30,938 bases of DNA. Origin: Selaginella moellendorffii. Its lineage: Eukaryota > Plantae > Lycopodiophyta. Below the pieces are notes generated by a model. It saw only the letters and a program-made list of their open reading frames with translations, was not told the origin of the DNA and did no database searches. The translations under genes were made by a program, and so were the position numbers. Positions within the stretch are counted from its first letter, which is position 1. The number at the start of each line of letters is the position of its first letter. The stretch covers positions 347,828 to 378,765 of the forward strand of contig NW_003314387.1 in assembly GCF_000143415.4 (NCBI RefSeq). The letters are read 5' to 3'. Shown here piece after piece: positions 4,727 through 28,260 of this stretch.

Positions 4727-5390
4727 ATTCCTCATCTTTGCCACCTTGCGATTTTCGCCAAGTGATGTGTCGAGTGTAGTGCTTCACGTAAGCTTGTGGG
4801 TGTGACTAGGCTAGTGGAGTCACGTTTTAAAGCTTCTCCTTGTCCCTTACCATGCTCGCAGTGGCTTAACGTACCCAGGAGCAGTTGAGGGACTTCTTTG
4901 AACCTCGCAGATCCTTGTGTTGTATCATCGCCTTGCTTGCCATGCTTCTTCTCTTGTCAGCCATCAGCTATGCAGAGTCTAAACCTGCAAGCAGCTCTTG
5001 AGGAATTGTTTGCTCTCACCTGATGCTTGATCAAGGCTCTCACAATGTACTCTGGGACTAGACTACAGTGGATATCACTGATGCAACAAGCTTTAGGTTC
5101 TGAGTCTAAGTTAGTTGCACCAACTCAAAGATGTTCTGTTTTGTTTCATGGTTTTGAACATGGTTTTTCTATAGGAACAAGCATCAGACTGGAAGCTTTT
5201 GGGTGGTGTCTTGATGAATTAAGCTCCCCGAGGGTTTCATCTTGCGAAGAAGAGAGAAACAACTACCCCCAACCTTCAGCACTCTTGACATTTCCAGATG
5301 CCTTGCAACTCGAATCTCTTGGGCAGAACGCACCGGTGCTCTTGAGGGGGGTGCCTGGATCAAATCAAACTGGTGGGAAACATTCGTGTG
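4727..5390 (+). pseudogene. F-box/LRR gene remnant, copy A (5' part cut off by the LTR element)
   Basis: LRR-like STLDISRC motif. Patchwise homology to 6020-6400, to 15845-15887 and to the reverse complements of 7480-8130, 8895-9725 and 13645-14700 (e.g. GTGCCTGGATCAAATCAAACT). Frameshifts and stops. Confidence 0.65.
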
Positions 5391-5470
5391 CCAGCTGAGC
5401 GCCATGCCCAGAATTTCAAGAAACGATTCATGAAAGTAACAAACACGTTAACAAGCTATTAATGCATAAT

Positions 5471-5569
5471 TTGGTCGGGAACCTGTTGGCCGGATATCTG
5501 GCTAGAATAAAAACAATTATTGGCAAGGTCACAGGCTCGAACCCACAGCCAGAGACCCAATTAAATTTT
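5471..5569 (+). repeat. Conserved ~100-nt hairpin/B-box element, copy A (tRNA-related SINE-like element or ncRNA)
   Basis: 91/99 nt identical and ungapped to the reverse complement of 13459-13557. Contains AAGGTCACAGG(C/T)TCGAACCC, resembling a tRNA variable loop plus T-loop. Ends in T4. Confidence 0.8.
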
Positions 5570-5589
5570 ACTTCGCTTGCGCAAGAATT

Positions 5590-5810
5590 TGCCGATGGGT
5601 CTTTATGGAATTCGCTGGAGTGCTTGAGCAGCAGCAGCAGCCACGATGATCATGGTCAGTGTGTCGATCTAGCCCAGACTCTTCCTTTTGCTTTAAAGTC
5701 ATGCTGGAACGCGTCTCAGCATTGCTCGCTTGAACGCCAACAGGTTTGGACGAGGAGAGGAGCTTAAACTTGCGACTCGCAATGCAGCCTTGTCTACGAA
5801 AGTATCATTG
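5590..5810 (+). pseudogene. PPR-like remnant
   Basis: VDLAQ-type motif. Shares GTCGATCTAGCCCAG and CTTGCG.CTCGC..AATGCAGCCT with 6760-6865. Very degraded. Confidence 0.45.
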
Positions 5811-5884
5811 CATTTCAGCTAGAGGGGGTGTCCAAGTTTGAATCCACCACTAGCTCCTCCTACATGCTTCGTCAAAATAGCGAA

Positions 5885-6480
5885 TGGCCGAGGACTACTG
5901 ACGACCTGGATAACGATACGCTGCTCCACACTTTCGAGCAGCGTTTGACTGCCGCGCTTGTGCCAATCTCATGTAAGAAAGAGTGGAGCTGAGCTAGAGC
6001 GTAGCCTTTCTTCTCTCTAGTTTCTCGCAGTGGCTTGACGTTGCAGATCATTGTGTTGTATCATTCCACCGCTTGTCATGCTTCTTCTTTGCTCTCACCT
6101 GACGCTCGATCAAGGCTCTCACAGGCTGCAGTGAATAACAAAGGAATCACTGGTGCATCAACCCTCAGGTTCTGAGTCTAATCAGTTGCACCAAATCAGG
6201 GATGTGCCTCTCGTGTTTTTGGGAGTGAGTATTTAATTTCATGGTTTTGAACATGAGGATTTGATCTTGCAAAGAAGAGAGAAACAAATAAATACCCCAA
6301 CCTCCAGCACTCTTGACATTTCCAGATGCCTCTCAACTCTGCTCTTCAAGAGGGTGCTTGGATCAAATCAAACTTGCTCATTTTCCAGAAACTTTTCTTG
6401 TTCCGAGAAACAAGTTTTGCTCCAAAAAAAATCCTGGAACCAAGAAGAGAGGCTTGGAAACGTTCGCGCGACCTTGCCCA
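5885..6480 (+). pseudogene. F-box/LRR gene remnant, copy B
   Basis: F-box start DDLDNDTLL, DNA-identical to 15602-15627, and STLDISRCL. Aligned to copy A over ~400 bp with deletions. Confidence 0.7.
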
Positions 6481-6572
6481 CGTGATTGATACGGAACAAG
6501 GAATCAGCACGCGTGCCATTCACTCAAAATCAAGAACAAGCGAAACACTTTAACAGGCTATTAATGTTTAAT

Positions 6573-6678
6573 TTGGACGGGAACATGTTGGTCGGATATC
6601 TGGCTATAATAAAAAAATTTATTGGCAAGGTCACAGGTTCGAATCCACAGCCAGAGAACCACCTAAAAACACTTTTTT
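6573..6678 (+). repeat. Conserved hairpin/B-box element, copy B
   Basis: Colinear with copy A. Canonical B-box GGTTCGAATCC at 6636-6646 and T6 at 6673-6678. Confidence 0.8.
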
Positions 6679-6699
6679 CAAGTGTAGGCGATGTTGGAG

Positions 6700-7010
6700 T
6701 TTCTCCGCGATATTGGAATTTCCTTGTTTCTCCCTCCCGCAGGCTCGAGAGAAAAAAAGACAGTGGTCGATCTAGCCCAGAAAGAAAAGATCCTGGAATG
6801 TGTCTCTCGCTTGGAACGATAATAGATTTGGAGGAGGAACTTGCGCCTCGCGTAATGCAGCCTCGTTACGATCGCACAGAGTGCTGCAGACTGCCAAGGA
6901 AGAACACGAACGCTCTGCAAGCTGGAACGCGAGCTATTGAGCGGAGCAGAGACAGGACACGACCCTGGACATCGGTTTACCGATGCCCAAGAGTTTTGGC
7001 AACCTTCGAA
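6700..7010 (+). pseudogene. PPR-like remnant, paralogous to 5590-5810
   Basis: Shared DNA patches with 5660-5790. The long ORF in the track crossing this region mixes element-derived and remnant sequence. Confidence 0.4.
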
Positions 7011-7029
7011 TGGCTGTGAGTCATGATCT

Positions 7030-7280
7030 CCAGCCCAGAGGACAGGTCCAACTAGCATCGGACTTTTCCCCACTCTTTCATTCTCCAGCGCTGAAATCTG
7101 GCTCGACACTGGCCTCGTCTAGCTTCCCAGATCTCCCCAGCAGATCCACCAAGCATCTTAAGTGTTCCATGATCGTGGACATGCTGTAGTCTTGGGCTAT
7201 GGACGACAAGTAGTTCTCGTCCCGAGATGACTGCAGGCAGAAGACCTCGCTCTGATCACAGTAGCTTGCAAGATGCAAAG
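7030..7280 (-). pseudogene. PLS-class PPR remnant (S2/E-proximal motif)
   Basis: DYSMSTIMEHLRCLVDLLGRSGKLDEA matches the canonical PLS-PPR motif EHYxCMVDLLGRAGxLxEA. Confidence 0.85.
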
Positions 7281-7296
7281 GAGGGAGAAGCGTTGC

Positions 7297-7354
7297 AAAA
7301 TTTTTTGATTGGGTCTCTGGCTGTGGATTCGAACCTGATCAGGTTCCTGTCCAA
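7297..7354 (-). repeat. Conserved hairpin/B-box element, copy C, with 44-nt internal deletion
   Basis: Both ends match copy D. The deleted centre leaves the perfect palindrome GAACCTGATCAGGTTC at 7331-7346. Confidence 0.8.
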
Positions 7355-7479
7355 ATCGGACACTAATTGCTTCTTAACGTATATCATACCTTCACCATAA
7401 CGGCGCAAGCTCTCGCTCATTTCTAAGCATCCTTTCTAAACCCGTGGGAACGTTTTATAAGGCTGTCATCCTTTCTGCG

Positions 7480-8130
7480 GTTGTCAAGCTCAAGAAAGAA
7501 ACCATTATGGAATGAAGATTTCACCACTGAATCCCTGGGATAACCTACCTTTTCTTCTTTTGAGAAACAAGGTTTCCCTGCATCCAACGACTGAATGTCC
7601 GAAGATGGCTTGTTTGAGCATTGAAGATTAAATTGATCCAGGCACGCTCTTGATTAGCAGCAAAGTTAAGAGTACAAGGCTGGAGGTACTTGTCTGTTCT
7701 TTCAAATCCTGGGGAGCTTGAGATTTCATCAAGGGGCTTTCTTGTCGTGTTCTATCCAAGTTTGATGCTTGTTCCTAGCAGCAACAAGAAAAAATCCATG
7801 AAATTTCAAGTCACACCCTGTGTGAAGAAGAGGGGGCAATGCATGGAAAGTACTCGGGGCCAAAAGGTGACTGTCCACAACAAGAGTATTTAGAGCAAAA
7901 AGGGCGAAAGATGAACTGTGGGAAAGCAATGCTTTCACTGCAACGTATATCCCTTGTGCCCTGCTGATCAATCCAAAAGCCACAACACTGGTGGTAGTGC
8001 AGCAGCTCCTCCGTCCCGCGTTTAAATTCTACAAGCTCTTGCCAGGTGCAAGGTTCCATGGCCGTTTGTGACAAGAGAAATGCTGGTCACGTCTTTCGAA
8101 CTGGAGCTACCTGAATTGGATGCCGTGGTT
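7480..8130 (-). pseudogene. F-box/LRR gene remnant, copy C
   Basis: GTCAAGCTCAAGAAAGAAACCATT, GAAGATGGCTTGT and TTGATCCAGGCAC are shared with 8895-9145 and 13645-13900. GGGGAGCTT..TTCATCAAG is the reverse complement of copy A sequence. Confidence 0.6.
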
Positions 8131-8210
8131 GGCTGCTTGCGAACAGTTAAGCTATCAATCACTGTGCCTCTTTTGTTATTTTATTCACTCCAATGGTGGT
8201 GATTTGCCAG

Positions 8211-8706
8211 GTCCCCCAGGCAGCAGAGACTATCGTCAAGGAGACCATCCATGGTTTTAATGCTTCTCATTTGCCTCCTCCAAAAGAGGGCGTCATTCGC
8301 ATGGAAGCCAACGGTGGATTCATCCTCCAGAAGATTAGCGACGAGAAATGCTACATAAGGTACGCTATTAGTTTTTTTTTTTTTTGTTTGTTTTCTTCTT
8401 AAGATAGTCACTACTTCTTTTACAGAGCAGTAATACACCTGGACCTTAAGCTCGACTTTGTTCCGACATGGGTGATTAACTTCCTTGGGCGTCAAGTTGT
8501 GGGACACGGCTTCAGGCTATACCTCAAGGTATATTTCTTTCCTTTTCGGGTGAAAAATGTCTAAGCTTTGTGTGTTACAACAGACTGTTTCTTCTGTTAA
8601 AGAGAGCAAAGTGTTTCAAGAATGCATCAGGCAACAGCCACTCTACAGCCGCATAACGTTACAGATGCTACCAAAATCGAGCCACGAAAATGGATACAAG
8701 AGTTGA
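8211..8706 (+). pseudogene. Last three exons of a START-like (polyketide cyclase/lipid transport superfamily) gene: 8211-8359, 8426-8528, 8584-8706
   Basis: GT-AG introns of 66 and 55 bp splice in frame to VPQAAETIVKETIHGFNASHLPPPKEGVIRMEANGGFILQKISDEKCYIRAVIHLDLKLDFVPTWVINFLGRQVVGHGFRLYLKTVSSVKES...YKS*. The D-L-K-x-x-x-V-P-x-W-V-I-N-F motif is typical of START C-termini. Upstream exons are not found. Confidence 0.8.
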
Positions 8707-8894
8707 GGTGCTTTTCATAAGAAGTATTCATAAGCTTCCTGCACAAGAGCATTTACATTTATAAACAATTTATAAACAAAGAGGAGCTTGAGGCCCACCG
8801 ATACTCCTGAAAAGTCCGAACTTATTCATGAGACATATGCAAGGTGGGTTTTATAAGATTTTTGTTGTTTTGCATGTCTAGAAAAATCTGCTGC

Positions 8895-9725
8895 AGTCAA
8901 GCTCAAGAAAGAAACCATTCTCTTCTCGATGGAATGAAACTCTCACTTGCTCCATGCTCTGGCGAGGCCATGGCAAACAAAATGGGTGGACTCTTCGTCT
9001 CAATCTGACAAGCAGCTGATGCAAAGGCTACTTTTGAGAAACAAAGCGTAAGTATGCTGCAACAAGAACCAGCAACAGCCATTTAAGGTATTGTCGTGGA
9101 AGATGGCTTGTCTGAGCTCGAGTTTGATTTGATCCAGGCACCCTGGTCCCATCTATTCTTCACTTGGTTGTCAAAGCTTGGAGGTCCATAGGTTTCGATC
9201 CTTTCAAATCCTGCTCCAAACTTTTGATGCCTTTTCTTGGCAATAATATATTGCTCTGAAACCGTGAAAGCTTACTCACCTGCAAAAAAAACTCTAGGGT
9301 TGCACCTGACATCCAATAAACCAGGGAAGCTCTTGAGGAAAATCCTAGATTCAACATAAACAAGTCACACCTCATGGAATTGGTGGTGATCTTGGTGCAA
9401 CTAACTAGTTAAACTTGTCCTCAAACACATGGTTTTGGCATTTGTCTTTCACACTATTGTCCAATCTTGTGAAAGCCTTGACCGAGCTTAAACTCAATCA
9501 GCTGAGAACAAGCTGTCTCAAAAGTTTCCAAAGAGCAGAAGGCATAATACAAAAGTCACAAACTCGTCTCATCACAAGTTGCATTGTGGTCACTCCATGC
9601 CTTGGATGTTGATGAACTACAGGCCTCCATTTATCTTGGAAAATACATCTATGAGGAATGAAGCAATCTGGACAATAGTATAAGCAAAATGAACACGAGA
9701 AGAACCATATATACCGTGGAAAGCA
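8895..9725 (-). pseudogene. F-box/LRR gene remnant, copy E
   Basis: Close colinear duplicate of 13645-14395, plus an extra segment containing GGTGCAACTAACT, the reverse complement of copy A sequence. Confidence 0.7.
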
Positions 9726-9756
9726 TGAGTTCTACACTCAAAACGACACACACATG

Positions 9757-9915
9757 GCACGGGCAATGTTCGATCAAATGCCCGAGTGCCACAAATTGTC
9801 GCATGGACTGCTAGGCCTACGCTCTCACTGGAATTTCTTCCACGCTTTAATTTGATCCTCTACCAGGAGATGGTCTTGGAAGGAATGGCTCCCGACTAGA
9901 TCACATTCACTTCCG
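9757..9915 (+). pseudogene. PLS-class PPR remnant
   Basis: ARAMFDQMPE..IVAWTA..AYA...LYQEMVLEGMAPD*ITFTS, read across frameshifts. Confidence 0.85.
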
Positions 9916-10192
9916 AAATCAGAAAAGTTCTTTGTCAGGATGTACCATCTAGTAGGACGAAACTGGCCTCAAGAATGCTAGAGCATAAGTTATAACATGT
10001 AGCTACGTGGGGCTCCTCGCCAAATGATGAACCTATGCAGAGACTTGCCCGATCGTGGAGCACTGGTACACGCAAGGTGGATTGTTAACATTGAGGATGT
10101 CACTGTCGTGTGCTAAAGTGGCCTGAAGAACGCCACCGTGATTGGATTCCTTGTGATTCCATCACTCTTTTAGCTAATAGAGCTTCTAATTA

Positions 10193-10269
10193 CAATCTTT
10201 TACAAGGAACCCACAGTACAAAGACTAAGCTCGGTCACAATCTTTTAAAATGAACCCAGGACTAAGCTC
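10193..10269. repeat. Short imperfect tandem duplication
   Basis: ACAATCTTTTA.AA.GAACCCA...GACTAAGCTC occurs twice in succession. Confidence 0.7.
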
Positions 10270-10393
10270 AATAATGAAGATTAGGCCATCGTTGGAATGT
10301 CCATTTTAAGGAGTTGTGCTCTTATTGGATAGCTCAATGTAAAAATGCTTTTCAATTAAAACGTACAATAATATGCTTTGCCTCCTGTGGGAA

Positions 10394-11045
10394 CATGCAG
10401 TCTATGTTAGGAGATCTCAGCAGGCATGGTGGATCAATGTTCCATCTGGAACGGATGAAATTTCTTGCTCAAGGTGCTCGTCTGACCACATTCCATAGCA
10501 ATGTTCTGAAGCTGTACGTGAAGGAGATATTCGATGGGTTGTACAAAGAGATCAGGAAGATCCTGGTGCCGTTCATGTGGATGTTGTGCTGCCATTTGAA
10601 TGGAAATTCGGGGGTTGGTAAATCTGCATTCGTCTGGTACTTCCGGTCATGATCTACGAGTCCAGAGCGACTGTTTTGATGTTCAAGGGTAACAAGCTCA
10701 GGGTGGTGAATAGAGAAGACTTCCCTCAGGAGATTGTGCTGGACAGCAAAGTAGATACCATCTCATCGATCTGTGAGTGGACTTGGGGCGGATGGTTGGA
10801 AATAAAACCCTTGTTGCTGCTTCATCACCAGACGAGTTCAATGTCAGAAAAGCCAAGCGGACAACGTTCACTCGCTATCTGCCTGCGTGGGAAAAGCACG
10901 AGTACGATGCTCTTGTGTCTTCTTGGAGGAAACGCGTGACAGACTACGAGAGTGGATCGGAAGAAGCCAAAGAGATAACGCAGAGAGTGAATGCTGCTGA
11001 AATGGCGTTTGAATGGTTTGGAGGTATCCCCTAGTTTCTTTGGGA
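10394..11045 (+). pseudogene. Crinkler/RHS-type (CR) P-loop NTPase remnant
   Basis: Colinear motifs over three overlapping ORFs: LYVKEIFDGLYKEI, Walker A GNSGVGKS, IVLDS (Walker B-like), LVAASSPD, YLPAWEKHE and FEWFGGIP*. This motif order is characteristic of CRN/RHS NTPases. Two frameshifts and a stop. Confidence 0.7.
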
Positions 11046-11139
11046 TGTAGAAGCAAACGGTCTGACTGTGGAAGCTTTTGAAAGGGATTGAAGCACTTGA
11101 GTATGGTTCTGACTCCTGATTTTGTCCTTCAAGCGTTTT

Positions 11140-11345
11140 GAGTGTTGGTGGTCCAGGAAACCAAGGTGCGCATCTTCATGCTCTCAAACATGCTCCTGGC
11201 GGCGCTCAAGTTGAAACTTGCGTGAGAGCTATCCAGCAGACAATGGTCTTGCGCAGCATCTCGTGAACGGCCTTGTCAAAATGCCCATTCTCGCAAATGC
11301 GAGGATCCACGGTACTGGATTCTTCTCCGGGATTTGACCGAAGCT
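11140..11345 (-). pseudogene. PLS-class PPR remnant
   Basis: ENGHFDKA..EMLRKTIVCWIAL and LSAARSMFESMKMRTLVSWTT. Confidence 0.8.
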
Positions 11346-12033
11346 GTTCTTCGTGAGGGCAACGACGCCTTGGATGGTCCTAATGATGGAAGTCGTTGTA
11401 ATTCTTAGGATACTACTTTATCCATCACGAATAGCATCAATACAGTAATCACTTCGAAGCTTTTAAAATAGGATCTACATATTTTGTCTTGGTAATGGGA
11501 GATTTCACTTCCTGAACATAGTCGCTTCTATATATCAGGTGATAGCCACACACAAAAAAAATTCAAAAAATGGATGGATTTAACAGCAAATGAAATCAAT
11601 CAAGATGTGGACGTTAGATCTTGCTTCCGGCACCAGGAATCGTCTAAAATCAATCCATGGTGAGGCTCTTTGGGTATCGAGGTTTCTTCATTTGAATCCT
11701 TGGAATCTTTCGGTTTTCGGTTTTCGACATCCAAGCCGGCTCCCTTTCGTCCTTGGGCGGCTGGATGCCTTGGATGATCGCCGCATTTGCCGCGTCTTGG
11801 CGTCTGGAAGGGATGTGTCAGGGAGCGAAGCAATTGCGTCAGAATAGATGCAGCTGAGCTTCTGGACCAGCTCGTCCCAAGTCCGGCACGACAGGCCCGT
11901 TGTGTAGTTGAGAGAGAGGGGATGGAAAAGGTCGCCTTTGTCTGGGTGTAACCGGATGGAGAGCTCCGAGGGATTCAAGCCACCCAAACATCGAGAGATG
12001 GCAGCTTTCCGCTGCACAGACACCTCCACTAAA

Positions 12034-12082
12034 ATCTAACGGTTTGGATGGTATATTCTAAGATATCCTTTAATCCAACGGC
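12034..12082 (+). promoter_or_regulatory. Pair of MSA-like (AACGG, MYB3R-type) motifs
   Basis: ATCTAACGGT at 12034 and ATCCAACGGC at 12073, with a TATA-like TATAAA at ~12130. No associated intact gene is seen. Confidence 0.3.
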
Positions 12083-12665
12083 TGTGATGTATCGCTCTTA
12101 ACCTTTTATTTGTTTGTAGTTACCACTAATATAAACTGCGTTTAAAAGTTCATTCTCATTCACTATTTCTAGCTTGTTGTCTAGCGTCTTTCTTGTTCAA
12201 ATGGTGAGGAAGGCTTGCATATGCTGGCAGGGTCATCGAGAATTCAATGGCACAACATTGTGTGTGATTGATAGATTATGCTGAAGTGACAACTGATGAG
12301 AATTTGGTATATATGATCGAATTGGTAAGCTCAATGGCATGTTTGTGCTGTTTGTGTGCTACTGGAGCAAATCAAATATATATATATCTTCCCTTCCACA
12401 AAATTTGATTGCATGAGTACAGTGGAGATGCACCTAAGTTAATACTTTTTAATGATCTGTTTGTTTAAGTCTGTAATAATGGATTCCATTGATTACAAGT
12501 TTGGTTTTGCTTCTTTACTATGATCTAGTACCAACTTAACAACACAGTTAATCTTAGGTGAGATTTTGAGGAGAGCCACTCTCACTAGTAGATTGTATAG
12601 TGTTATAAAAAAGGAAAATAATAAAATGGTCCAACACAGTTAATTTAATAATAAAATAATAAAAT

Positions 12666-12801
12666 AGTGTTCATGTTAGGGGGCGACCCTAACACCGTAT
12701 TATTCTTGATTGAAAGTCGAGGCGGATGGGAATCGAACCCAGCAACCCTTCACAATAGAACATTACAGCGTGCATGCTATAACCACAAAGCCATGAACAC
12801 T
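12666..12801 (-). ncRNA. tRNA-derived Pol III-type element (Tyr-like head) with paired termini
   Basis: A-box-like TGGCTTTGTGG, B-box GGTTCGATTCC, CTGTAA anticodon-loop-like motif, 10-bp terminal inverted repeat AGTGTTCATG/CATGAACACT, followed by ATTTT. Confidence 0.6.
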
Positions 12802-12869
12802 GGGAGATAACAAAATATTATTTCAGCACCTCTTATTTGAAAAACAAGATTTGGAATCCATCTGATTGT

Positions 12870-13450
12870 CCACGTCGACGACATCCAGGGGCTGCGAGGC
12901 CAGAGATTTGGAGGATCCACGCGCGGATCCTGGAGAGCAGCTACTGGCCGAATCAATACCGTCTTCATCCGGCATGAAATCAAAGATTTCTTCCTCTGCT
13001 ATTCACTGCTGGAAGGGGAACCCATGGAACGTCCTGTCATTCTGGGCAGTAGATTCGTCCAGGACACGAGATCCTTGGCCGGCGTTTTTGCCCAAGCTCG
13101 ATTTCGCTGCCACAATTTGCCCCTGCTGCGCGAGAGCCATTATCATCGAGTTCCATGGCGCTCTGAGACGCAATCAAACATAGACTCTCACTCTCGGATG
13201 CGGGATGCCGCCACATACGCGGTGACCATCGCGTTCCAGGAGACGATCCTAATCGAACAAGATTGACGCCGCATCGATCGAATGCCCTGTTCTTGCTGCT
13301 CGCATTTGCCAGCGAAAGGGAATATCGCGCGATCCAAGAGCCTGAACCCGGCGCGGCGGCGTGGATCATTCGGGGGGATCGGCACGAGAGAAGATTTAGC
13401 TCCAGCAACGCTGCCGAGAGCGACTTTGCGGAGAAGAGAAATCCCTCGTT
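12870..13450 (-). pseudogene. PLS-class PPR remnant
   Basis: RMIHA, GKC..RAFD, IVSWNAMVTAY, WNSMIMALAQQGQIVAAK, KDLVSWT and EIFDFMPD, spread over different frames. Confidence 0.85.
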
Positions 13451-13455
13451 CATAC

Positions 13456-13557
13456 AAAAAAATTTGATTGGGTCTCTGGCTGTGGGTTCGAACCTGTGAC
13501 CTTGCCAATATATTTTTTTATTCTAGTCAGATATCCGGCCATCAGGTTCCCGTCCAA
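13456..13557 (-). repeat. Conserved hairpin/B-box element, copy D
   Basis: 91/99 identical to copy A. B-box GGTTCGAACCC and T7 tail. Confidence 0.85.
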
Positions 13558-13644
13558 AGTGTACACTAATCGCTTCTTAACGTATACCATAATGTAAACA
13601 GCGGCGCAAGAGATTTTCGTTTTGTGGGCGCCTGGCGCGCAGCG

Positions 13645-14700
13645 TGTCAAGCTCAAGAAAGAAACCATTCTCTTCTCGATGGAATGAAACTCTCACTTTC
13701 TCCATGCTCTGGCGAGGCCATGGCAAACAAAACGGGTTGGATGGACTCTGCATCTCAATCTGAGCAAGCAGCTGATGCAGAAGTTATTTTTGAGAAACAA
13801 AGTATAAGTATGCTGCAACAAGAACCAGCAACATCCGTTTAAGATATTGTTCTGGAAGATGGCTTGTCTGAGCTCGAGTTTGATTTGATCCAGGCACCAT
13901 GGTCCCGGGAATCTATTCTTCACTTGGTTGTCCAAGCTGGAGGTCCATAGGTTTGGATCCTTTCAAATCCTCGGGGCGTGAGACTCTGGAGCTCCAAGTT
14001 TTGATGCCTTCTCTTGGCAATAATATAATATATTGCTCTGAAACCGTGAAAGCTTACTCACCCGCAAACAAAACTCCAGGGTTGCACCAGAGATCCAATA
14101 AACCTGTGAGAGCCTTGACCAAGCTCAAACTCAATCAGCTCAGAGCAAGCTTTCTCAAAAGTTTCCAAGAGCAGATGGCATAACACAAAAAACGTATATC
14201 AGGTCACCAACTCATCTCATCACAAGTTGCGTTGTGGTCACTCCACGCCTTGGATGTTGATGAACTACAGGCCTCCATTTTATCTTGGAAAATGCTCGAG
14301 GCCAAAGGGTGGCGAAGATGAGGAATGAAGCGATCTGGACTGGACAAGAGTATAAGCAAAATGAGCACGAGAAGAACCACACATGCCGCGGAAAAGCAGT
14401 GCTTGTGCTTGTGAGCCTAGTTTGAAGATGTCTGAGACTGAGAAGAAAGACCATGCTGCTCGACTCATAGAGCACGCCCGGCAGCAGCACACCGCCCGGG
14501 TAAAGAGCCCCCTGGATCGAAAATGTGCAGCAGTAGCGTATAATGGCAATGGCGGTGGTTTTCCATGGCATCGTTCTTGAGCCTTGACGAGGAGGTGCCA
14601 TCCAGCGAAGATTTGCAGGAAGGAGGAGCGATCTCCAGCGGTGGGCGCCTGGGCGAGAATGCGGTGAGCACAGATCTGGGAGGGGGAAGGCGCATCCACG
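13645..14700 (-). pseudogene. F-box/LRR gene remnant, copy D (most complete)
   Basis: F-box-like LPDL/CAHRILAQAP/LEIA..SCK..WHLLVK across frameshifts near 14700-14570. TATACTCTTGTCCAG and GCTTCATTCCTCA.CTT.GCCACC are shared with copy F, the latter also with copy A. Confidence 0.65.
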
Positions 14701-14714
14701 AGGAAAATCGTCTC

Positions 14715-15180
14715 CAGCGGCCTCGAGGTTCCTTGCTAATCTGGTCATAGAAAGGTATGGAAAGTGCGGGCGCTGGAAATCTTCCAGAAGATGAAAGATC
14801 GAGGTTCTTTCTCGTGGAAGATTGCGATCGCGGCATTTGCCCTTGTTACTCTTTTTCGAGCATCCAGTTATTTCTCTTGGCAGCTATCAATGCCGATCCG
14901 GGGGAGATCCACGCGCTAATCATCGCCGCGTTACGGTGCTCCGTTGGCGAGCATGCCATCGCCGAGATCTTCTTCTGCCAAGAACTGGACAGACACTTGC
15001 ATCGGGTGGAACCAGGGCATTGCCGTGTGAGCTCGAGACTGGCATCCCAGCCTGATCGGCGCCACATCCCAATCTCTGCCCCAAGCTCCAATTACTACAA
15101 CGACAAGCCAAAGATGGTGATGGTGTTATTGTCTCAGCTCCAGGATTGCGAGGAGATCAGACAGCAGGGGTATGGCCTCC
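14715..15180 (+). pseudogene. PLS-class PPR remnant with possible E+ trace
   Basis: RFLANLVIERYGKCG, EIFQKMKDR..FSWKIAIAAFA, GEIHALI and EEIRQQGY. Confidence 0.75.
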
Positions 15181-15289
15181 TCCAAAGGCCGTGGTTGATT
15201 TACCCTCCAGCAGTAGTCTTTCAACCAGGCCTGGGGCGGGCCTTCTGCCAACTTAAGTCGAGGTTCCTGGTGTTTCTCACCATGTGTTT

Positions 15290-15500
15290 CTCACCTGGAT
15301 CTCTGCCACATCGCCATTGATAGCTGCAAGAATTCGATCGACGAGCATTTGCTGGGCAAATGCGTTCCAGAAGAAAACATTTCCATCTTCCATTTTGTGG
15401 AGGACACCCAAGGCATCCGCGGTGCGCCCGCACTTTCCATACATTTCCATGACGAAATTCGTGAGGAACGATCAGAGCAGCGTCTCCTCCTCGTCGTCAA
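15290..15500 (-). pseudogene. PLS-class PPR remnant, inverted paralogue of 14728-14911
   Basis: DRFLTNFVMEMYGKCGRTADALGVLHKMEDGNVFFWN. Exact 19-nt and 13-nt inverted matches to the + copy. Confidence 0.85.
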
Positions 15501-15554
15501 GAAAAATGCGATGGAACCATTCGTTAACTACAGGTAAGCTTCGTCAAAATAGCA

Positions 15555-15885
15555 AATGTCGCAAGGACAGCGATAGCAGAGGTGACGCTGCCACCATTGG
15601 GCGACCTGGATAACGATACGCTGCTCTGCACTTTTGCTTGCATTCCAACAAGGAAGTTCCTCACCCGAGAAGCGCTTGTCTGCTGTGCTTGGCTGGATGA
15701 TCCGGTCTGGCTCAAACCAAGACAAGCCTTCAAACAATACCTCGCAAAGCAAGCATCACAAGCATTGCTTTTGTGATTTAAAGTGGTATGTATATACTCT
15801 TGTCCAGATTGCTCAAGAACGCACAAGAGACTGTCTTGAGCTTCATTCCTCACCTTTGCCACCTTTCGATTTTCGCCAAGCGATG
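15555..15885 (+). pseudogene. F-box gene 5' remnant, copy F, interrupted by the gypsy LTR
   Basis: LGDLDNDTLLCTFACIPTRKFLTREALVCCAW fits the F-box consensus. Homology to copy A stops at the LTR boundary. Confidence 0.8.
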
Positions 15886-16794: not shown

Positions 16795-18358
16795 TGTGAG
16801 ACACAAAATCCCTAGGCCCCAAAGTGGAGCTGGAAAGGGTGCCATGTGGTAGTGGCCGAAGTGAAAGCCAAACAAGCGTAACACGTTTGGACTAAAAGCT
16901 CCGACTTGAAAGGTCGAGAGCGGGAGTGGAACTCCCAACAAAGTGCTCGAGGAACAAGCATGAAGCAAGCAATAAGCAAGGCTCCAAAAAGGGACCCAAA
17001 AAGGACCAACACATGACACGTGAAAGTGTCTGAGGTGGAGTCCGAGGTGGAGTCCGAGATGGAGTCCGAGATGGAGTCCGAGATGGACCCAGACGGAGTC
17101 CGAGATGGAGTCCGAGATGGACCCGAGACGGAGTCTGAGATGGAGTCCAAAGTGGAGTCCACGATGGAGTCCGAGATGGAGTCCGAAGTGGAATCCGAGA
17201 TGGAGTCCGAGATGGACCGAGACGGAGTCCGAGATGACCGGGACCAAGACCGAGACCAAGACCGAGACCGGGACTGAGACCGAGACCGGGACCGAGACCG
17301 AGACCGAGGTGGAGGCCGAAACCGAGTCCGAGTCCGAGTCCGAGTCCGAGTCTGAGTCCGAGTCCGAGTCCGAGTTCGAGTCTGAGAGGGTGAAAGCCCA
17401 AAGCGTTCGTCTCCCAGATCCTGGGGGTTTTGGCTCCAAAAGTATAGTAAGGGGGAGGACTGTAGTGGAGCCAGTTTGGCCAGGAAAGGCCAGACCCAGT
17501 GTTGGGTGATGAACTGACCACTGGGAAGTCCAAGACTAGAGTGAACACGGACCGACAAGCGGGGTAGCTTGGTGAAGTGTTCAAGAGCCGGCTCTAGTTC
17601 CCCCGGGAGATCGACTGGCCGATGCTCCCAGTCCAAGTGTGGGTGGCACTACCTACTTGGATACCAGACGTGGCTCAATGGAACCTCGCTCTAAGCCCAT
17701 GGCTAGAGCACCCAAGGGCGGAAGGTGGGGAAAGTACCTAGGTGGCTCGCGTAAGGCCACGGTGTTCCGAAATGTCGTCCCAAAGGCCCAGACTGTGGAA
17801 AGGAAGAGGAACAGTCCTCTAGGGTGTGACCAAGGACACAGTCATGTGGTGATGAAGTCCTAGAGGACCGTGGGGCTTAGTGGTCGGGCCGGTGGGCCTC
17901 GATCCAGTGGCAGTGTTGGCAAACACGGCCAAAGGCAAAAAGGGACTTAATGGGGACTGACAGAGGGATATTGGGGAAGGCTGTTCCCTTTGTCGGTTAG
18001 CATCCTAAGGATGCTAAGGAGTGGATCTAGGATGACCACTCATGGATGGTTGGCCCAGTCTTGGAGAGACAAGACTGTGTTGCAAGTGGTATTGGACTAC
18101 CAGTGCAGCAAAGGTGATTGGGCATGGCCTTAGCGTAACAGGCTGTTATGTTGGTGGTACCTTTGAATGTCGGTCATGGGATTGGACACATGGAACACTT
18201 GGACCAGGTGCAAGGGTTGAGTGGCATGGATGCCATTTTTGGGGCTAGCAAGTCCCAAGTCCTGAATTGGACTTATGGAGGTTGTGAATGAGACTCCTCC
18301 AAATGGTCGGAGGTGTGGTTAAGTGACTAAAGTAGAATGGAAAAATTAGTCACTTACA
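16795..18358 (+). mobile_element. 5' LTR (1564 bp)
   Basis: TGTGAG...CTTACA. Direct repeat of 22391-24109 and followed by the PBS. Confidence 0.95.
17030..17386. repeat. Compound minisatellite in LTR: (GGAGTCCGAGAT)n, (CCGAGA)n, (CCGAGT)n
   Basis: Directly visible 12-mer then 6-mer arrays. Confidence 0.95.
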
Positions 18359-22390: not shown

Positions 22391-24109
22391 TGTGAGACAC
22401 AAAATCCCTAGGCCCCAAAGTGGAGCTGGAAAGGGTGCCACGTGGTAGTGGCCGAAGTGAAAGCCAAACGAGCGTAACACATTTGGACTAAAAGCTCCGA
22501 CTTGAAAGGTTGAGAGCGGGAGTGGAACTCCTAACAAAGTGCTCGAGGAACAAGCACGAAGCGAGCAATAAGCGAGGCTCCAAAAAGGGACCCAAAAAGG
22601 ACCAACACATGACACGTGGAAGTGTCTGAGGTGGAGTCCGAGATGGAGTCCGAGATGGAGTCCAAGATGGAGTCCGAAGTGGAGTCCGAGATGGAGTCCG
22701 AGATGGACCGAGACGAAGTCCGAGATGGAGTCCGAGATGGACCCGAGACGGAGTCCGAGATGGAGTCCGAAGTGGAGTCCGAGATGGAGTCCGAGATGGA
22801 CCAAGACGAAGTCCGAGATGGACCCGAAATGGAATCCGAGATGGAGTCCGAGAAGGACCCGAGATGAAGTCCGAGGTCAAGACCGAGACCGGGACCAAGA
22901 CCGAGACCGAGACCGAGACCGGGACCGAGACCAAGATCGAGACCGGGACCGAGACCGAGACCGGGACCGAGACCGAGACCGGGACTGAGACCGAGACCGG
23001 GACCGAGACCGAGATTGAGGCAAAGGCCAAGACCGAGCCCGAGCCCAAGCCCGAGCCCGAGTCCGAGTCCAAGTCCGAGTCCGAGTCCGAGTTCGAGTCC
23101 GAGTCCGAGTCCGAGAGGGTGAAAGCCCAAAGCATTCATCTCCCAGACCCTGGGGGTTTGGTGAGCTCCAAAAGTATAGTAAGGGGGAGGACTGTAGTGG
23201 AGCCAGTTTGGCCAGGAAAGGCCAGTTTGGCCCAAGAAGGCCAGACCCAGTGTTGGGTGATGAACTGACCACTAGGAAGTCCAAGACTAGAGTGAACACG
23301 GACCGACAAGCGGGGTAGCTTGGTGAAGTGTTCAAGAGCCGGCTCTAGTTCCCCCGGGAGATCGACTGGCCGATGCTCCTAGTCCAAGTGTGGGTGGCAC
23401 TACCTACTTGGATACCAGGCGTGGCTCAATGGAACCTCGCTCTAAGCCCATGGCTAGAGCGCCCAAGGGCGGAAGGTGGGGAAAGTACCTAGGTGGCTCA
23501 TGTAAGGCCACGGTGTTCCGAAATGTCGTCCCAAAGGCCCAGATTGTGGAAAGGAAGAGGAGTAGTCCTCTGGGGTGTGACCAAGGACACAGTCGTGTGG
23601 TGATGAAGTCCCAGAGGACCGTGGGGCTTAGTGGTCGGGCCGGTGGGCCTCGATCCAGTGGCAGTGTTGGCAAACACAGCCAAAGGCAAAAAGGGACTTA
23701 GTGGGGACTGACAGACGGATATTGGGGAAGGCTATTCCCTTTGTCGGTGAGCATCCTAAGGATGCTAAGGAGTGGATCTGGGATGACCACTCATGGATGG
23801 TTGGCCTAGTCTTGGAAAGACAAGACTGTGTTGCAAGTGGTATTGGACTACCAGTGCAGCAAAGGTGATTGGGCATGGCCTTAGCGTAACAGGCTGTTAT
23901 GTTGGTGGTACCTTTGAATGTCGGTCATGGGATCGGACACATGGAACACTTGGACCAGGTGCAAGGGTTGAGTGGCATGGATGCCATTTTTGGGGCTAGC
24001 AAGTCCCAAGTCCTGAATTGGACTTATGGAGGTTGTGAATGAGACTCCTCCAAATGGTCGGAGGTGTGGTTAAGTGACTAAAGTAGAATGGAAAAATTAG
24101 TCGCTTACA
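22391..24109 (+). mobile_element. 3' LTR (1719 bp)
   Basis: Direct repeat of 16795-18358 with longer arrays and a short local duplication at ~23221-23239. Confidence 0.95.
22628..23116. repeat. Expanded compound minisatellite in the 3' LTR
   Basis: Same 12-mer and 6-mer units as 17030-17386, with more copies. Confidence 0.95.
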
Positions 24110-25803: not shown

Positions 25804-28260
25804 TCAGTTTGGGTCGGAAATTTGCTGAGGTGCTGATGCTGAATATGTCGACGTGATATGGTCGAAGCTTGTTGAGGTTGACGATCTCAATGAAGTCTTC
25901 AGTGAGTGTGCTGACTTTGGCGGTGCCGTTGGGGTATAGTTCAATGATTTTGAAAGGTCCTTGCCATTTGGTGTGGAGTTTTCGGCCAAGTTTGCCGATG
26001 GGTCCTCGGTATCAGAGAACATGATCGTCGACGTTGTATTTGGGAATGTTATACCGGGATGCTTGTCAGTCATGCCGAGCTTTTCTCTGTTTTTGGATGG
26101 CGTGAAGTGTCTAGAGGGCGTTGAGTCGGAGTTTGTCGAGATGTTCGAGTTGCTGAAGCCTTTCTCGAACTGCATGTTGCTGTTGCTTTTGCTGTGGCAT
26201 GTCAGAGAGGTATTGCTTCGGCCCACTTGGTAGTGTAATCGGTGGTGATGATGATGTACTGATTTCGTTGACGGGTGCTGACTTGGGGTCCGATGAAGTC
26301 GAGTCCCCATTTCTGAAATGGTGCCATTGGGAATGTTGGGTTGAGTTGTTGAGTCTGAGTTTTTTGGCAGTAATCGGTGTTGGTTGACAGTATGTAGTGT
26401 TGGAACTTTTGAAGTGAGTAGATCATGCCGAGAGCTTTTTTCTTGGTGGTGGTGTAATTTCGTTCAGCTGGGTTGAGTAGTCAGCTGGCGTAGTAGATTG
26501 GTTGATCTCGGTTGTTGTGTTTAGTTTGGCTGAGAATTGCACTAGTGACAATGTCGAAAGTGTCGACATGAATGTGGAACTCTTGTGTCCAATTGGGCTT
26601 GGAAAGGATTGATGCTGTTGTTAGTTTGAGTCAGAGAATGTCGAATGCTTGTTGCTGTTCAAATGTCTATGTCCATTGGGCATCTTGCTTCAATCCATTG
26701 GTGAGTGGTTTGGCAATGTGAGCGTACTTGTGGATGAATCGTCGGTGATATCCGACTTTGCCGAGGAAGCGCTGAAGTTCTTTGTCGGGGTTGAGTGCTA
26801 TGTCTTTGTTCTCCTCGCACTTGTTGAGGCATTTCTCCAGGCATTCAAGATGTCGATCTTCCAAGATGAAAACGCTGAAGTCGTCCATGAAGACTCTCAT
26901 GAAGTCGGTGAGGTATTCTCGGAAAGTGTTGGTGACAAGCCTTTGGAAGGTGAATGGGGCGTTGTAGAGTCCAAAAGGCATTCGTCGGTAAGCATAGGCT
27001 CCCCATGGAATGATGAATGCTGTCTTGTGCTGATCTTCTTCGGCAATGTAAATTTGGTTGTAGCCAGAGAAACCATCGAGGAAGGAGTACATCTCGTGTC
27101 CGGCGACTACGTCAAGAACTTCATTGGTAAACGGTATTGGGAAAACATCTTTTTCAGTGGCGTCGTTGAGCTGTTTATAGTTGACGCAGATTCGAAGTTT
27201 GCCATTTTTCTTTGGCACAACCACCAATGGTGAAAGCCAAATCGGATTCTGAATCGGGTAGATGTACTCGACTTGGAGAAGCTTGTTGAGTTCTTTCTTT
27301 ACTTGTTCCATCAGATTCGGATTCATCCGGTAGGCTGCTTGGCTTCTTGGTTTTGAGTCTGGAAGAAAGGTGATGGTGTGAAGGCTGAGTTTGGGCGAAA
27401 TTCCCTTAAGGTCTCGATAACTCCAAGCGAACAAGTGTTTCTTCTTTTGGAGAAGATTGATGCCTTTGTCTCAAAAACTTGCCGAGATGTCGGTAGCGAG
27501 TACAATGTAGTGTTCGTTGCCATCATCGGCAAGGCTGAATTTTTTGAGTTTTTGGTCGGCTGGAATTGACGGAATGTAGGCAACTTTGTTGTGGTTGTCG
27601 ACTGTGAATGTCGGTGGCGCTTCGAGTTTTGTATCTCGAGTGACTGGATTTTTTAGTGCTGATGTAATCGGGGGTCGTTCTCATTGGAAGTCGGCGACAA
27701 TTCGGAAGAGGTCGATCTCGGCCAAAGGTTCGAGATCGGGGTAGGCTTTGAGAATTTGTTGTTCTTCATAGTTGTCGAGGCCATCTTCGAGATTAAATTC
27801 TTCCAAGTCAATAGGTCGGTTTTGGCTGGACAGTGATTTGGTCGCTTTTGTCGACACAGTTGTCGGTCTGTCTGGTCTGTGAAGGATAAGATTGTCATTG
27901 GGCCAATCTTGATAAACTTGGGCAGTTCGGAGCCAAGGTCAACCGAGGAAAATCAAGTATCCATTGGTCTGCTCTGGTAGTTTGAGGACGACATAGTTGA
28001 CTGGTATTTCAACGCCTTGAATGGTGGGGTTGACTTTTTGGATGATGCCTTTGGGTTGAATAGATCGGTGGTCGGCCATTTGGACATTGAAAGGTGCTGG
28101 GTGGACTGGGCCAATGTTGAGTTGTTGAACAAGACTTTCTTCAATAATATAAACGCTAGAGCTGCTGTCAATTATGGCTCCTCGAACAAGGTGTTTGTCG
28201 AGTCGTAGGTCAATTGTCGGAACATCATTGTCACAATCGCCTGGTTGAATCTCAATTCGA
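25804..28260 (-). pseudogene. pol: pol: protease (IIDSSSS), RT (FLDGFSGYNQI, MPFGL, FMDD), RNase H (HVD, YYAS, NYTTT), integrase fragments (WGLDFIGP; GPF)
   Basis: Motifs read from the ORF track and by manual translation. Several internal deletions, frameshifts and stops. Confidence 0.92.

What the first reader, a model, noticed from the sequence alone, without database searches (positions are those of the whole stretch)
5445..13590. Conserved ~100-nt hairpin/B-box element sitting between an F-box/LRR remnant and a PPR remnant in four units
Seen: copies at 5471-5569(+), 6573-6678(+), 7297-7354(-) and 13456-13557(-). Each lies just downstream of an F-box/LRR remnant and immediately upstream of a co-oriented PPR remnant, and the PPR piece differs between A/B, C and D. 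Copies A and D are 91/99 identical with no indels, while their flanking gene remnants align only in patches. The element has a 12-bp stem GAACCTG(N)TGGCC/GGTCACAGGTTC with a variable extrahelical base, an A-rich loop, a B-box and a T4-T7 run. About 25 nt of AT-rich upstream sequence is also conserved. The T-stem is broken, so it is not a functional tRNA. Inference: it may be a Pol III ncRNA or small-RNA precursor, a SINE-like head, or the cis-acting end/recombination site of a unit that carries or joins gene fragments.
Basis: partly seen in the sequence, partly recalled or inferred. Interest (0 to 1): 0.75.

Follow-up and report, generated by a model that had tools for sequence, protein, structure and literature searches.

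The report
Decayed tRNA-like module in duplicated pseudogene unit
A ~125-base sequence that carries half of a tRNA gene's signals is repeated four times in this spikemoss region, apparently because the broken F-box/LRR-like gene unit it belongs to was duplicated locally, and nothing I could test shows that it still works as an RNA gene.

Summary
Four copies sit at the stated places, A and D are 91/99 identical, and B box, T-run and the 12-bp stem are present.

The four copies are not independent. A/B lie in a ~1.1-kb tandem duplication and C/D in a segmental duplication. A fifth, B-like copy is inferred elsewhere on the same Selaginella moellendorffii scaffold from a gene model.

- **Flanks:** the upstream flank is an F-box/LRR-like pseudogene unit, shown by homology to hypothetical Selaginella proteins; the Pfam F-box match is below threshold. 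A PPR remnant lies downstream of C and D only, not of A or B.
- **RNA tests:** ARAGORN and Infernal/Rfam find no tRNA or other known RNA. Folding energies equal those of shuffled sequence. Four of five stem substitutions break pairs and none is compensatory.
- **Damage:** A has a mutated B box, C lacks 44 nt, and the inferred fifth copy lacks the 5' stem arm.
- **Divergence:** 11-14%, close to the best-aligning flank blocks (12-23%).

My best reading (about 50%) is a decayed tRNA-derived Pol III-type cassette, pseudo-tRNA or SINE-like, fixed at the 3' end of a composite repeat unit and multiplied passively. One thing stays unexplained: A/B-type and C/D-type units share only this element and a 22-nt patch.

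The parts
5441..5569 (+). Copy A of the element: conserved 5' part 5441-5470, core 5471-5560, T4 run 5566-5569. Its B box is mutated (GGCTCGAACCC at 5534-5544).
6543..6678 (+). Copy B: exact B box at 6636-6646, T6 run after a 5-nt insertion in the tail, and one stem mismatch plus one G-U change.
7296..7388 (-). Copy C: the same element with 44 nt missing inside the stem, which leaves a 16-nt palindrome. Exact B box at 7325-7335 and a T4 run.
13455..13587 (-). Copy D, the best-preserved copy: perfect 12-bp stem with a bulged A, exact B box at 13484-13494, and a T7 run.
5350..5371 (+). 22-nt patch GGTGCCTGGATCAAATCAAACT in the LRR-like flank upstream of A. It recurs at 6353-6374(+) with 1 mismatch, exactly at 9121-9142(-) and 13877-13898(-), and at 7625-7646(-) with 4 mismatches. 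It is the only other block shared by A/B-type and C/D/E-type units.
4898..5440 (+). F-box/LRR-like pseudogene flank of copy A. 5177-5395 is 97% identical in translation to the C-terminus of SELMODRAFT_428362. That reading frame stops at 5396-5398, 43 nt before the element.
5867..6542 (+). F-box-like start (5867-5973) and LRR-like body of the second tandem unit, which ends in copy B.
13592..14398 (-). LRR-like flank upstream of copy D. It is duplicated at 8896-9725(-) (unit E, 92% in aligned columns) without the element, and in patches at 7389-7723(-) upstream of copy C.
7108..7218 (-). PPR remnant 78 nt downstream of copy C, co-oriented. It matches residues 361-397 of a synthetic PPR-DYW protein.
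13006..13331 (-). PPR remnants about 125 nt downstream of copy D, co-oriented, in two frames.

Best explanation
The element is a decayed tRNA-derived, RNA-polymerase-III-type cassette: a pseudo-tRNA or the head of a SINE-like unit. It keeps the variable-loop/T-stem-5'/T-loop string of a tRNA gene (an exact B box), a ~20-nt acceptor/trailer-like stretch and a T-run at the distance expected for a tRNA gene. It has lost the cloverleaf.

I infer that this cassette became fixed at the 3' end of an F-box/LRR-like gene unit. That unit then decayed into pseudogenes and was copied by local DNA duplication: an A/B tandem repeat of ~1.1 kb, the C/D(/E) segmental copies, and further units on the same and other scaffolds.

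On this reading the element multiplied passively with the unit rather than by its own transposition, and the copies are now drifting. The 12-bp 'hairpin' would be a by-product of an inverted copy of the self-complementary T-arm sequence, not a maintained RNA structure.

- **Shown:** the copies, their lesions, the duplication structure, and the absence of any known RNA family or of covariation.
- **Inferred:** the tRNA/SINE origin, and that the element was already in the ancestral unit.
For: **tRNA-type signals**
- Exact B box in 3 of 4 copies, where about 0.7 matches are expected in the whole 31-kb window.
- A T-run in all four copies.

**Duplication structure**
- A-B homology runs from 4898/6035 through the element to about 5790/6865, as in a tandem duplication.
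- C-D-E share the upstream flank.
- From differences read off the alignment, the copies group as (A,B),(C,D).
- The window encodes SELMODRAFT_430248 exactly, so it lies on a 449-kb S. moellendorffii scaffold.
- The gene model SELMODRAFT_448641 on that scaffold contains the translation of a B-like copy of the element, after F-box-like and LRR-like exons. So the composite unit recurs.

**No sign of a maintained RNA**
- No tRNA or any other Rfam family, even at E<=10.
- Folding z-scores are about 0.
- 0 compensatory changes; 4 of 5 substitutions in paired columns break the pair.
- Lesions: the B box is mutated in A, 44 nt are deleted in C, and 15 nt of the 5' stem arm are missing in the copy inferred from SELMODRAFT_448641.
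- The open reading frame through the element does not look protein-coding, by eye from the ORF translations: nearly every substitution changes the amino acid, and the reverse strand is also open.
- Divergence of the element (A-B 12%, C-D 11%) is close to that of the BLAST-alignable flank blocks (12-23%).
Against: - A/B-type and C/D-type units share the element at 89% (core 83/90) while nearly everything else between them is unalignable. The exceptions are a 22-nt patch and one weak 44-nt block. Simple co-duplication with neutral decay predicts alignable flanks.
- In forced global alignments the element is significantly better conserved than its flanks: A-B 88% vs 63-74%, p=3e-5; C-D 89% vs 56%, p=8e-10. 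It also has no indel over 125 nt in A, B and D.
- C-D similarity stops exactly at the T-run, with no downstream similarity (p=0.73). That looks like a defined terminus.
- The A box is only weakly recognisable (TGGC... without AGTGG), so a full Pol III type-2 promoter is not shown.
- The tRNA origin rests on about 20 nt.
- No other Selaginella DNA could be fetched, so copy number and flanks genome-wide are unknown.
Confidence: 0.5

Rival explanations
1. It is, or recently was, a functional Pol III unit. Either a ~70-100-nt tRNA-like ncRNA is transcribed from the B box and ended at the T-run, or a TFIIIC-binding B-box site acts as a boundary between the F-box/LRR gene and the next gene. On this reading purifying selection explains the island of conservation.
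For: - The element is an island of conservation between unit types whose flanks are otherwise unalignable.
- The 40 nt around the B box are the most conserved part.
- All four copies keep a T-run although the tail around it varies.
- A 7-bp terminal pairing TCTGGCT/AGCCAGA encloses the B box like an acceptor stem.
- Other notes of this scan report tRNA-derived Pol III cassettes, one per tandem unit, in this genome (unchecked).
Against: - There is no covariation, and stem substitutions are mostly disruptive.
- A's B box is mutated, C lacks 44 nt, and another copy lacks the 5' arm.
- The A box is weak and there is no conserved TATA: C and D read ATTAGTG where A and B read ATTAATG.
- There is no Rfam match and no match in metagenome contigs.
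- The surrounding genes are pseudogenes.
Confidence: 0.15
2. It is the terminal module of a mobile or recombinogenic unit. This could be a SINE inserted more than once, or the 3' end of a non-autonomous element (Helitron-like or other) that carries gene fragments. That would explain the sharp common 3' boundary and the differing downstream DNA.
For: - Similarity between C and D, and between A/B and C/D, ends at the T-run. There are three different downstream contexts.
- The tree of the copies is star-like, with A-D distance equal to A-B distance although the A-D flanks are unalignable.
- The region is a mosaic of F-box/LRR, PPR and other gene fragments.
- Some plant SINEs end in T-rich tails (my own knowledge, not checked here).
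Against: - No target-site duplications are visible at either candidate 5' boundary (inspection).
- The upstream flank is the same gene family in every copy, including the inferred fifth one, which is not what random insertion gives.
- There is no CTRR end and no GC-rich subterminal hairpin as in Helitrons.
- There is no LTR/PBS, and the sequence is unrelated to Helenus-1_SMo.
- A-B homology continues past the T-run.
- The element ORF shares no 5-residue words with any predicted protein of comparable length in the database.
Confidence: 0.17
3. It is the 3'-end module of the F-box/LRR gene transcript, that is, its 3' UTR and polyadenylation region, possibly with a tRNA-like processing or mobility signal. 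It would have been conserved while the genes were functional.
For: - It is always co-oriented with the upstream F-box/LRR-like reading frame and 43-290 nt behind it.
- The loop holds a conserved AATAAA, and there is a UGUA-containing upstream part in A, B and D.
- A U-rich run follows.
Against: - The best-conserved part is the B-box region, downstream of the putative poly(A) signal.
- Plant poly(A) regions do not need 90 nt at >90% identity (my own knowledge).
- No transcript evidence is available.
- The genes are broken.
Confidence: 0.1
4. The element has no function and no mobility. It is a neutral island kept similar by gene conversion among nearby copies, perhaps favoured by the hairpin-forming inverted repeat.
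For: - All copies lie within 8 kb, and B and C are convergent and only 617 nt apart.
- One homoplasy exists: T in B and C versus C in A and D at the T-loop position.
- There is no sign of structural or coding constraint.
Against: Conversion alone does not explain why tracts would always be confined to the same 125 nt, or why A-B flanks that are homologous were not homogenised too.
Confidence: 0.08

Closest known systems
tRNA pseudogenes and 'tRNA-like' Pol III cassettes in plant tandem repeats (decaying tRNA gene clusters)
   Same: It has an exact B box within a variable-loop/T-arm string, a T-run at tRNA-gene distance, one copy per repeated unit, and copies in various states of decay.
   Different: There is no cloverleaf, no recognisable anticodon arm or acceptor stem, and only a weak A box. 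The tRNA of origin cannot be named. The repeated unit is a protein-gene remnant rather than a tRNA array.
tRNA-derived plant SINEs (SINE2 type)
   Same: It is about 100-125 nt long, with a tRNA-related head carrying a B box and a T-rich 3' end.
   Different: No TSDs were found and the A box is weak. Upstream flanks are homologous in all copies. Dispersal could not be tested, and the four copies are explained by two local duplications.
Helenus-1_SMo, the tRNA-like TRIM of Selaginella moellendorffii (Kojima 2024, PMC10886601)
   Same: It comes from the same genome, is a ~120-nt unit with a tRNA-like B box, and is predicted not to encode a working tRNA.
   Different: The published LTR consensus is a different sequence. 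There is no LTR pair, no TG...CA ends, no PBS or PPT, and no 5-bp TSD.
Helitron 3' termini that carry captured gene fragments
   Same: There is a subterminal hairpin, a sharp 3' boundary, and neighbouring gene fragments of different origin.
   Different: There is no CTRR end and no A/T insertion site. The hairpin has a 44-nt loop and lies 35 nt from the end. Homology of A-B continues beyond the 'end'.

Membership tests
functional tRNA gene | Cloverleaf with acceptor, D, anticodon and T arms, recognised by tRNA detectors | tested here: not met
   ARAGORN at default settings finds 0 genes. At lowered thresholds it gives only a spurious model with a 2-bp T stem. The Infernal tRNA model gives no hit at E<=10 on the element alone.
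functional tRNA gene | B box GGTTCGANNCC and a downstream T-run terminator | tested here: met
   The B box is exact in B, C and D, with 1 mismatch in A. Runs of T4-T7 lie about 20-30 nt downstream.
tRNA-derived SINE | Internal A box (TRGCNNAGTGG) 30-60 nt upstream of the B box | tested here: inconclusive
   Only TGGC followed 9 nt later by GG is present at a suitable distance (TGGCCGGATATCTGG), read. It matches 5 of the 9 specified positions.
tRNA-derived SINE | Target-site duplications flanking each insertion | tested here: not met
   No direct repeats of 6 nt or more abut the boundaries of A or D (inspection). Old copies could have lost them.
tRNA-derived SINE | Many dispersed copies with unrelated flanks | not testable with these tools
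Inside the window all copies share the same upstream gene-family flank.
Helenus TRIM (tRNA-like LTR) | Sequence similarity to Helenus-1_SMo; two LTRs with a PBS (TGG...) and a PPT between them | tested here: not met
   The consensus read from the supplement of PMC10886601 is unrelated. The DNA after copy A does not start with a PBS. A and B are joined by homologous flanks, not by an internal region.
Helitron 3' end | CTRR terminus next to a host T, with a GC-rich 16-20-nt hairpin 10-12 nt upstream | tested here: not met
   The ends read ...CCCAAT(T/C)AAA-Tn. The hairpin arms are separated by 44 nt and end 35 nt before the boundary.
miRNA/small-RNA hairpin precursor | An extended (about 20 bp or more), thermodynamically stable stem that is conserved | tested here: not met
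   The stem has 12 bp. Folding z-scores are -0.4 to +0.1 for the full-length copies. There is no Rfam miRNA family hit. The stem is deleted in two copies.
structured ncRNA in general | Compensatory base changes supporting the helices | tested here: not met
   Of 24 pairs, 0 show changes on both sides. Of 5 substitutions in paired columns, 4 break the pair. Only 3 sequences were available, so power is low.
F-box/LRR gene (upstream flank) | A Pfam F-box or LRR domain above threshold | tested here: not met
   Window ORF pieces give no hit. The paralogue SELMODRAFT_430240 gives F-box at E=0.049, 14 bits against a cut-off of 20.5. The F-box/LRR reading therefore remains plausible but weak.
PPR gene remnant (downstream flank) | Significant similarity to PPR repeats on the element's strand | tested here: met
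   This holds for C (E=4e-6) and D (E=1e-4; Pfam PPR E=0.015). It is not met for A and B.

The most novel reading that the evidence does not exclude
The element is a selectively maintained B-box module at the junction between F-box/LRR-type and PPR-type genes of a lycophyte gene-cluster family. It could be a TFIIIC-bound boundary or terminator, or a short tRNA-like Pol III RNA. Alternatively, it is a hairpin-bearing breakpoint hot spot at which different gene fragments have repeatedly been joined. The copies in this window would be recently pseudogenised members.
Probability: 0.1. Interest if true: 0.6.

Novelty: new member of a known kind. Interest (0 to 1): 0.25.

Why it matters
If the main reading holds, this is an ordinary fossil. 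It is one more tRNA-derived Pol III-type relic in a genome where such relics seem common, according to other unchecked notes of this scan. Its use is for repeat and pseudogene annotation: several 'hypothetical protein' gene models of S. moellendorffii, such as SELMODRAFT_448641, translate parts of it.

It would matter more if the island of conservation reflects selection. That would point to a B-box element with a role between genes, which has hardly been explored in plants. The genome-wide census that decides this is simple to run.

Tried and rejected
- **Real, intron-containing or permuted tRNA.** The 5' stem arm looks like a T-stem-3' plus acceptor strand placed upstream of the T-stem-5' and loop. 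I rejected this because there is no D or anticodon arm, ARAGORN and Infernal are negative, and the resemblance follows from the self-complementarity of GGTTCGAACC.
- **Helenus-1_SMo solo LTR.** Rejected: the consensus sequence is different.
- **Coding exon.** The frame is open through A, B and D. Rejected because nearly all substitutions change the amino acid, the reverse strand is open too, and there is no Pfam or protein match.
- **More copies elsewhere.** Two metagenome scans gave 0 hits. A protein-word search with the element ORF gave none.
- **Helitron, TRIM or SINE termini and TSDs.** None was found by inspection.
- **Hidden homology in the flanks, tested against shuffles.** It is present for A-B downstream and C-D upstream, absent for C-D downstream, and borderline for B-C upstream.
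- **The 22-nt patch as a small-RNA site complementary to the element.** I saw no complementarity by eye. Its perfect conservation is compatible with the same ~11% divergence as the element (by my arithmetic, P about 0.07 for 0 of 23 differences).
- **The lead that Tx1-like LINEs of this genome target a tRNA-like YTCGA motif** (scan note s1-410701). There is no LINE sequence in the window and no insertion at the B box here. The lead was not testable further.

Full report
**1. What is there**

The window comes from Selaginella moellendorffii. It encodes the annotated protein SELMODRAFT_430248 without a single difference outside one intron. It therefore lies on a 449,091-bp scaffold of the public assembly, which agrees with an earlier scan note.

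The element exists as described. Copies are A 5441-5569(+), B 6543-6678(+), D 13455-13587(-), and C 7296-7388(-), which lacks 44 nt. A profile HMM of the four finds no further copy in the 31-kb window.

- A and D are 91/99 identical without indels, exactly as reported.
- By segment, A vs D is 20/26 in the 5' AT-rich part, 83/90 in the core and 8/9 in the tail.
- The B box GGTTCGAAYCC is exact in B, C and D, while A reads GGCTCGAACCC. About 0.7 such matches are expected by chance in the whole window.
- All four copies end in a run of 4-7 T.

**2. Is it a known or structured RNA?**

- ARAGORN finds no tRNA. With thresholds lowered to 80% and introns allowed, it gives one spurious model with a 2-bp T stem.
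- Rfam/Infernal finds nothing on the element, even when the element alone is searched at E<=10.
- Minimum free energies equal those of dinucleotide shuffles: z is -0.4 to +0.1 for the full copies.
Of 24 pairs, none has a compensatory change. Of five substitutions in paired columns, four break the pair and one turns C-G into U-G.
- Copy C has lost the inner 44 nt of the hairpin.
- The frame that is open through A, B and D is not coding. Nearly every substitution changes the amino acid and the opposite strand is open as well. No protein or Pfam match exists.

**3. The copies are not independent**

*A and B.* They belong to a tandem duplication with a period of about 1.1 kb. Its homology runs from 4898/6035 through the element and on to about 5790/6865, broken by many indels.

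*C, D and E.* C and D share their upstream flank in patches. A third copy of that flank, E at 8896-9725, is 92% identical to D in aligned columns. Its homology stops 63 nt before the place of the element, and E has no element.

*Tree.* From differences read off the alignment, the copies group as (A,B),(C,D). About five differences are fixed between the two pairs and six to nine are private to each copy.

**4. The flanks**

*Upstream.* A profile-free search of 1.8 billion proteins with the F-box-like piece at 15528-15773 found SELMODRAFT_430240. Further searches found SELMODRAFT_428362, 428584, 430248, 448641 and LOC112342286.
- The C-terminus of 428362 is 97% identical to the translation of 5177-5395, just upstream of copy A. 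That frame stops 43 nt before the element.
- The only domain evidence is a sub-threshold Pfam F-box hit, E=0.049. The window pieces give none. 'F-box/LRR remnant' is therefore plausible but weakly supported.

*A fifth copy.* The gene model 448641 contains, after F-box-like and LRR-like exons, the peptide that a B-like copy of the element would encode, minus five residues. Those residues correspond to the 15 nt of the 5' stem arm. I infer a fifth copy elsewhere on the same scaffold, again in the same composite unit and again damaged.

*Downstream.* Co-oriented PPR remnants are real after C (7108-7218, E=4e-6 to a synthetic PPR-DYW protein) and after D (13191-13331, E=1e-4; 13006-13173, Pfam PPR E=0.015). 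I found none after A or B. There the element is followed by a spacer and the F-box-like start of the next tandem unit.

**5. Rate compared with the flanks**

- Within A-B the element differs at 12%, and within C-D at about 11%.
- The BLAST-alignable flank blocks differ at 12-23%, which is not clearly different.
- In forced global alignments the flanks are much worse: A-B 63-74% and C-D 56% in aligned columns, plus 20-40% gap columns. Fisher tests give p=3e-5 and 8e-10. Such alignments mix decayed and non-homologous stretches.
- Indels do hit the element: 44 nt in C, an inferred 15 nt in the fifth copy, and 5 nt in B's tail.
- Taken together, since the recent duplications the element behaves roughly like the better-preserved neutral DNA around it.

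**6. What remains odd**

Between the A/B-type and C/D/E-type units almost nothing aligns. The exceptions are the element (89%), a 22-nt patch (GGTGCCTGGATCAAATCAAACT) and one weak 44-nt block.
- The patch is exact in A, D and E, has one mismatch in B and four in C, and lies 75-294 nt upstream of the element.
- The weak block aligns at p=0.007 against shuffles.
- The A-D distance (11%) is no larger than the A-B distance (12%).
- C-D similarity ends exactly at the T-run, with no downstream similarity (p=0.73).

Three explanations remain open:
- a burst of duplications of a longer ancestral unit, followed by large replacements and deletions;
- past selection on the element;
- a mobile or recombinogenic terminus.

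I could not separate these without the rest of the genome.

**7. Known families**

- Helenus-1_SMo, the published tRNA-like TRIM of this species, has a different sequence and architecture.
- No TSDs, CTRR ends, LTR/PBS features or miRNA-like stems are present.
- The exact 15-nt T-arm string GGTCACAGGTTCGAA occurs in one paper on bacterial methionyl-tRNA synthetase. This only shows that it is a generic tRNA T-arm string.
- Two scans of metagenome contigs for the core found nothing.
- Other notes of this scan report decaying tRNA arrays and orphan tRNA-derived Pol III cassettes, one per tandem unit, in this genome. They also report LINEs that target a tRNA-like motif. These are unchecked leads. 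They fit the view that such relics are common here.

**8. Verdict**

The 'four units' are two duplicated lineages, and the PPR neighbour holds for only two copies.

The most likely identity, at about 50%, is a decayed tRNA-derived Pol III-type cassette carried at the 3' end of an F-box/LRR-like pseudogene unit and multiplied passively.

A maintained function (ncRNA or TFIIIC site, about 15%), a transposon terminus or SINE (about 17%), a 3'-UTR module (about 10%) and conversion-maintained neutrality (about 8%) are not excluded.

The decisive test is a genome-wide census of the element with its flanks.

Noticed in passing
window 5350-5371(+), 6353-6374(+), 7625-7646(-), 9121-9142(-), 13877-13898(-): A 22-nt patch GGTGCCTGGATCAAATCAAACT is exact in three units and near-exact in two, although the DNA around it is unalignable between unit types. 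It lies at the end of the F-box/LRR-like reading frame. It could be a small conserved site or simply a surviving block.
   Followed up: partly
window 14565-15317(+): The window encodes SELMODRAFT_430248 (199 aa, hypothetical) exactly. Related gene models (428362, 428584, 448641, LOC112342286) stitch together pieces of the same repeated unit, and one translates part of the tRNA-like element. These are probably mis-annotated pseudogene mosaics.
   Followed up: partly
window ~12720-12795(-): This is another tRNA-like stretch, with B box GGTTCGATTCC, about 660 nt downstream of copy D and followed by AT-rich DNA. ARAGORN calls it only at an 80% threshold (tRNA-Glu-like). It may be a SINE head or a tRNA pseudogene, and it is unrelated in sequence to the element.
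   Followed up: partly
window 17500-17560(+) and 23251-23311(+): Sub-threshold Rfam hits to the box C/D RNA SCARNA18 (25 and 22 bits, gathering score 40) lie inside two near-identical repeats spaced about 5.7 kb apart, probably the LTR-like ends of a non-coding retroelement.
   Followed up: no
window 14728-14922 and 15285-15469: An inverted duplication carries PPR remnants. The one at 15280-15471(-) matches PPR proteins at E=4e-15. It sits inside the region annotated as SELMODRAFT_430248.
   Followed up: partly
window 26667-28805(-): A Ty3/gypsy-type element has a reverse-transcriptase-like ORF at 26667-27434(-). I identified it by eye only. A run of X in ORF 27939-28805 marks an assembly gap.
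   Followed up: no
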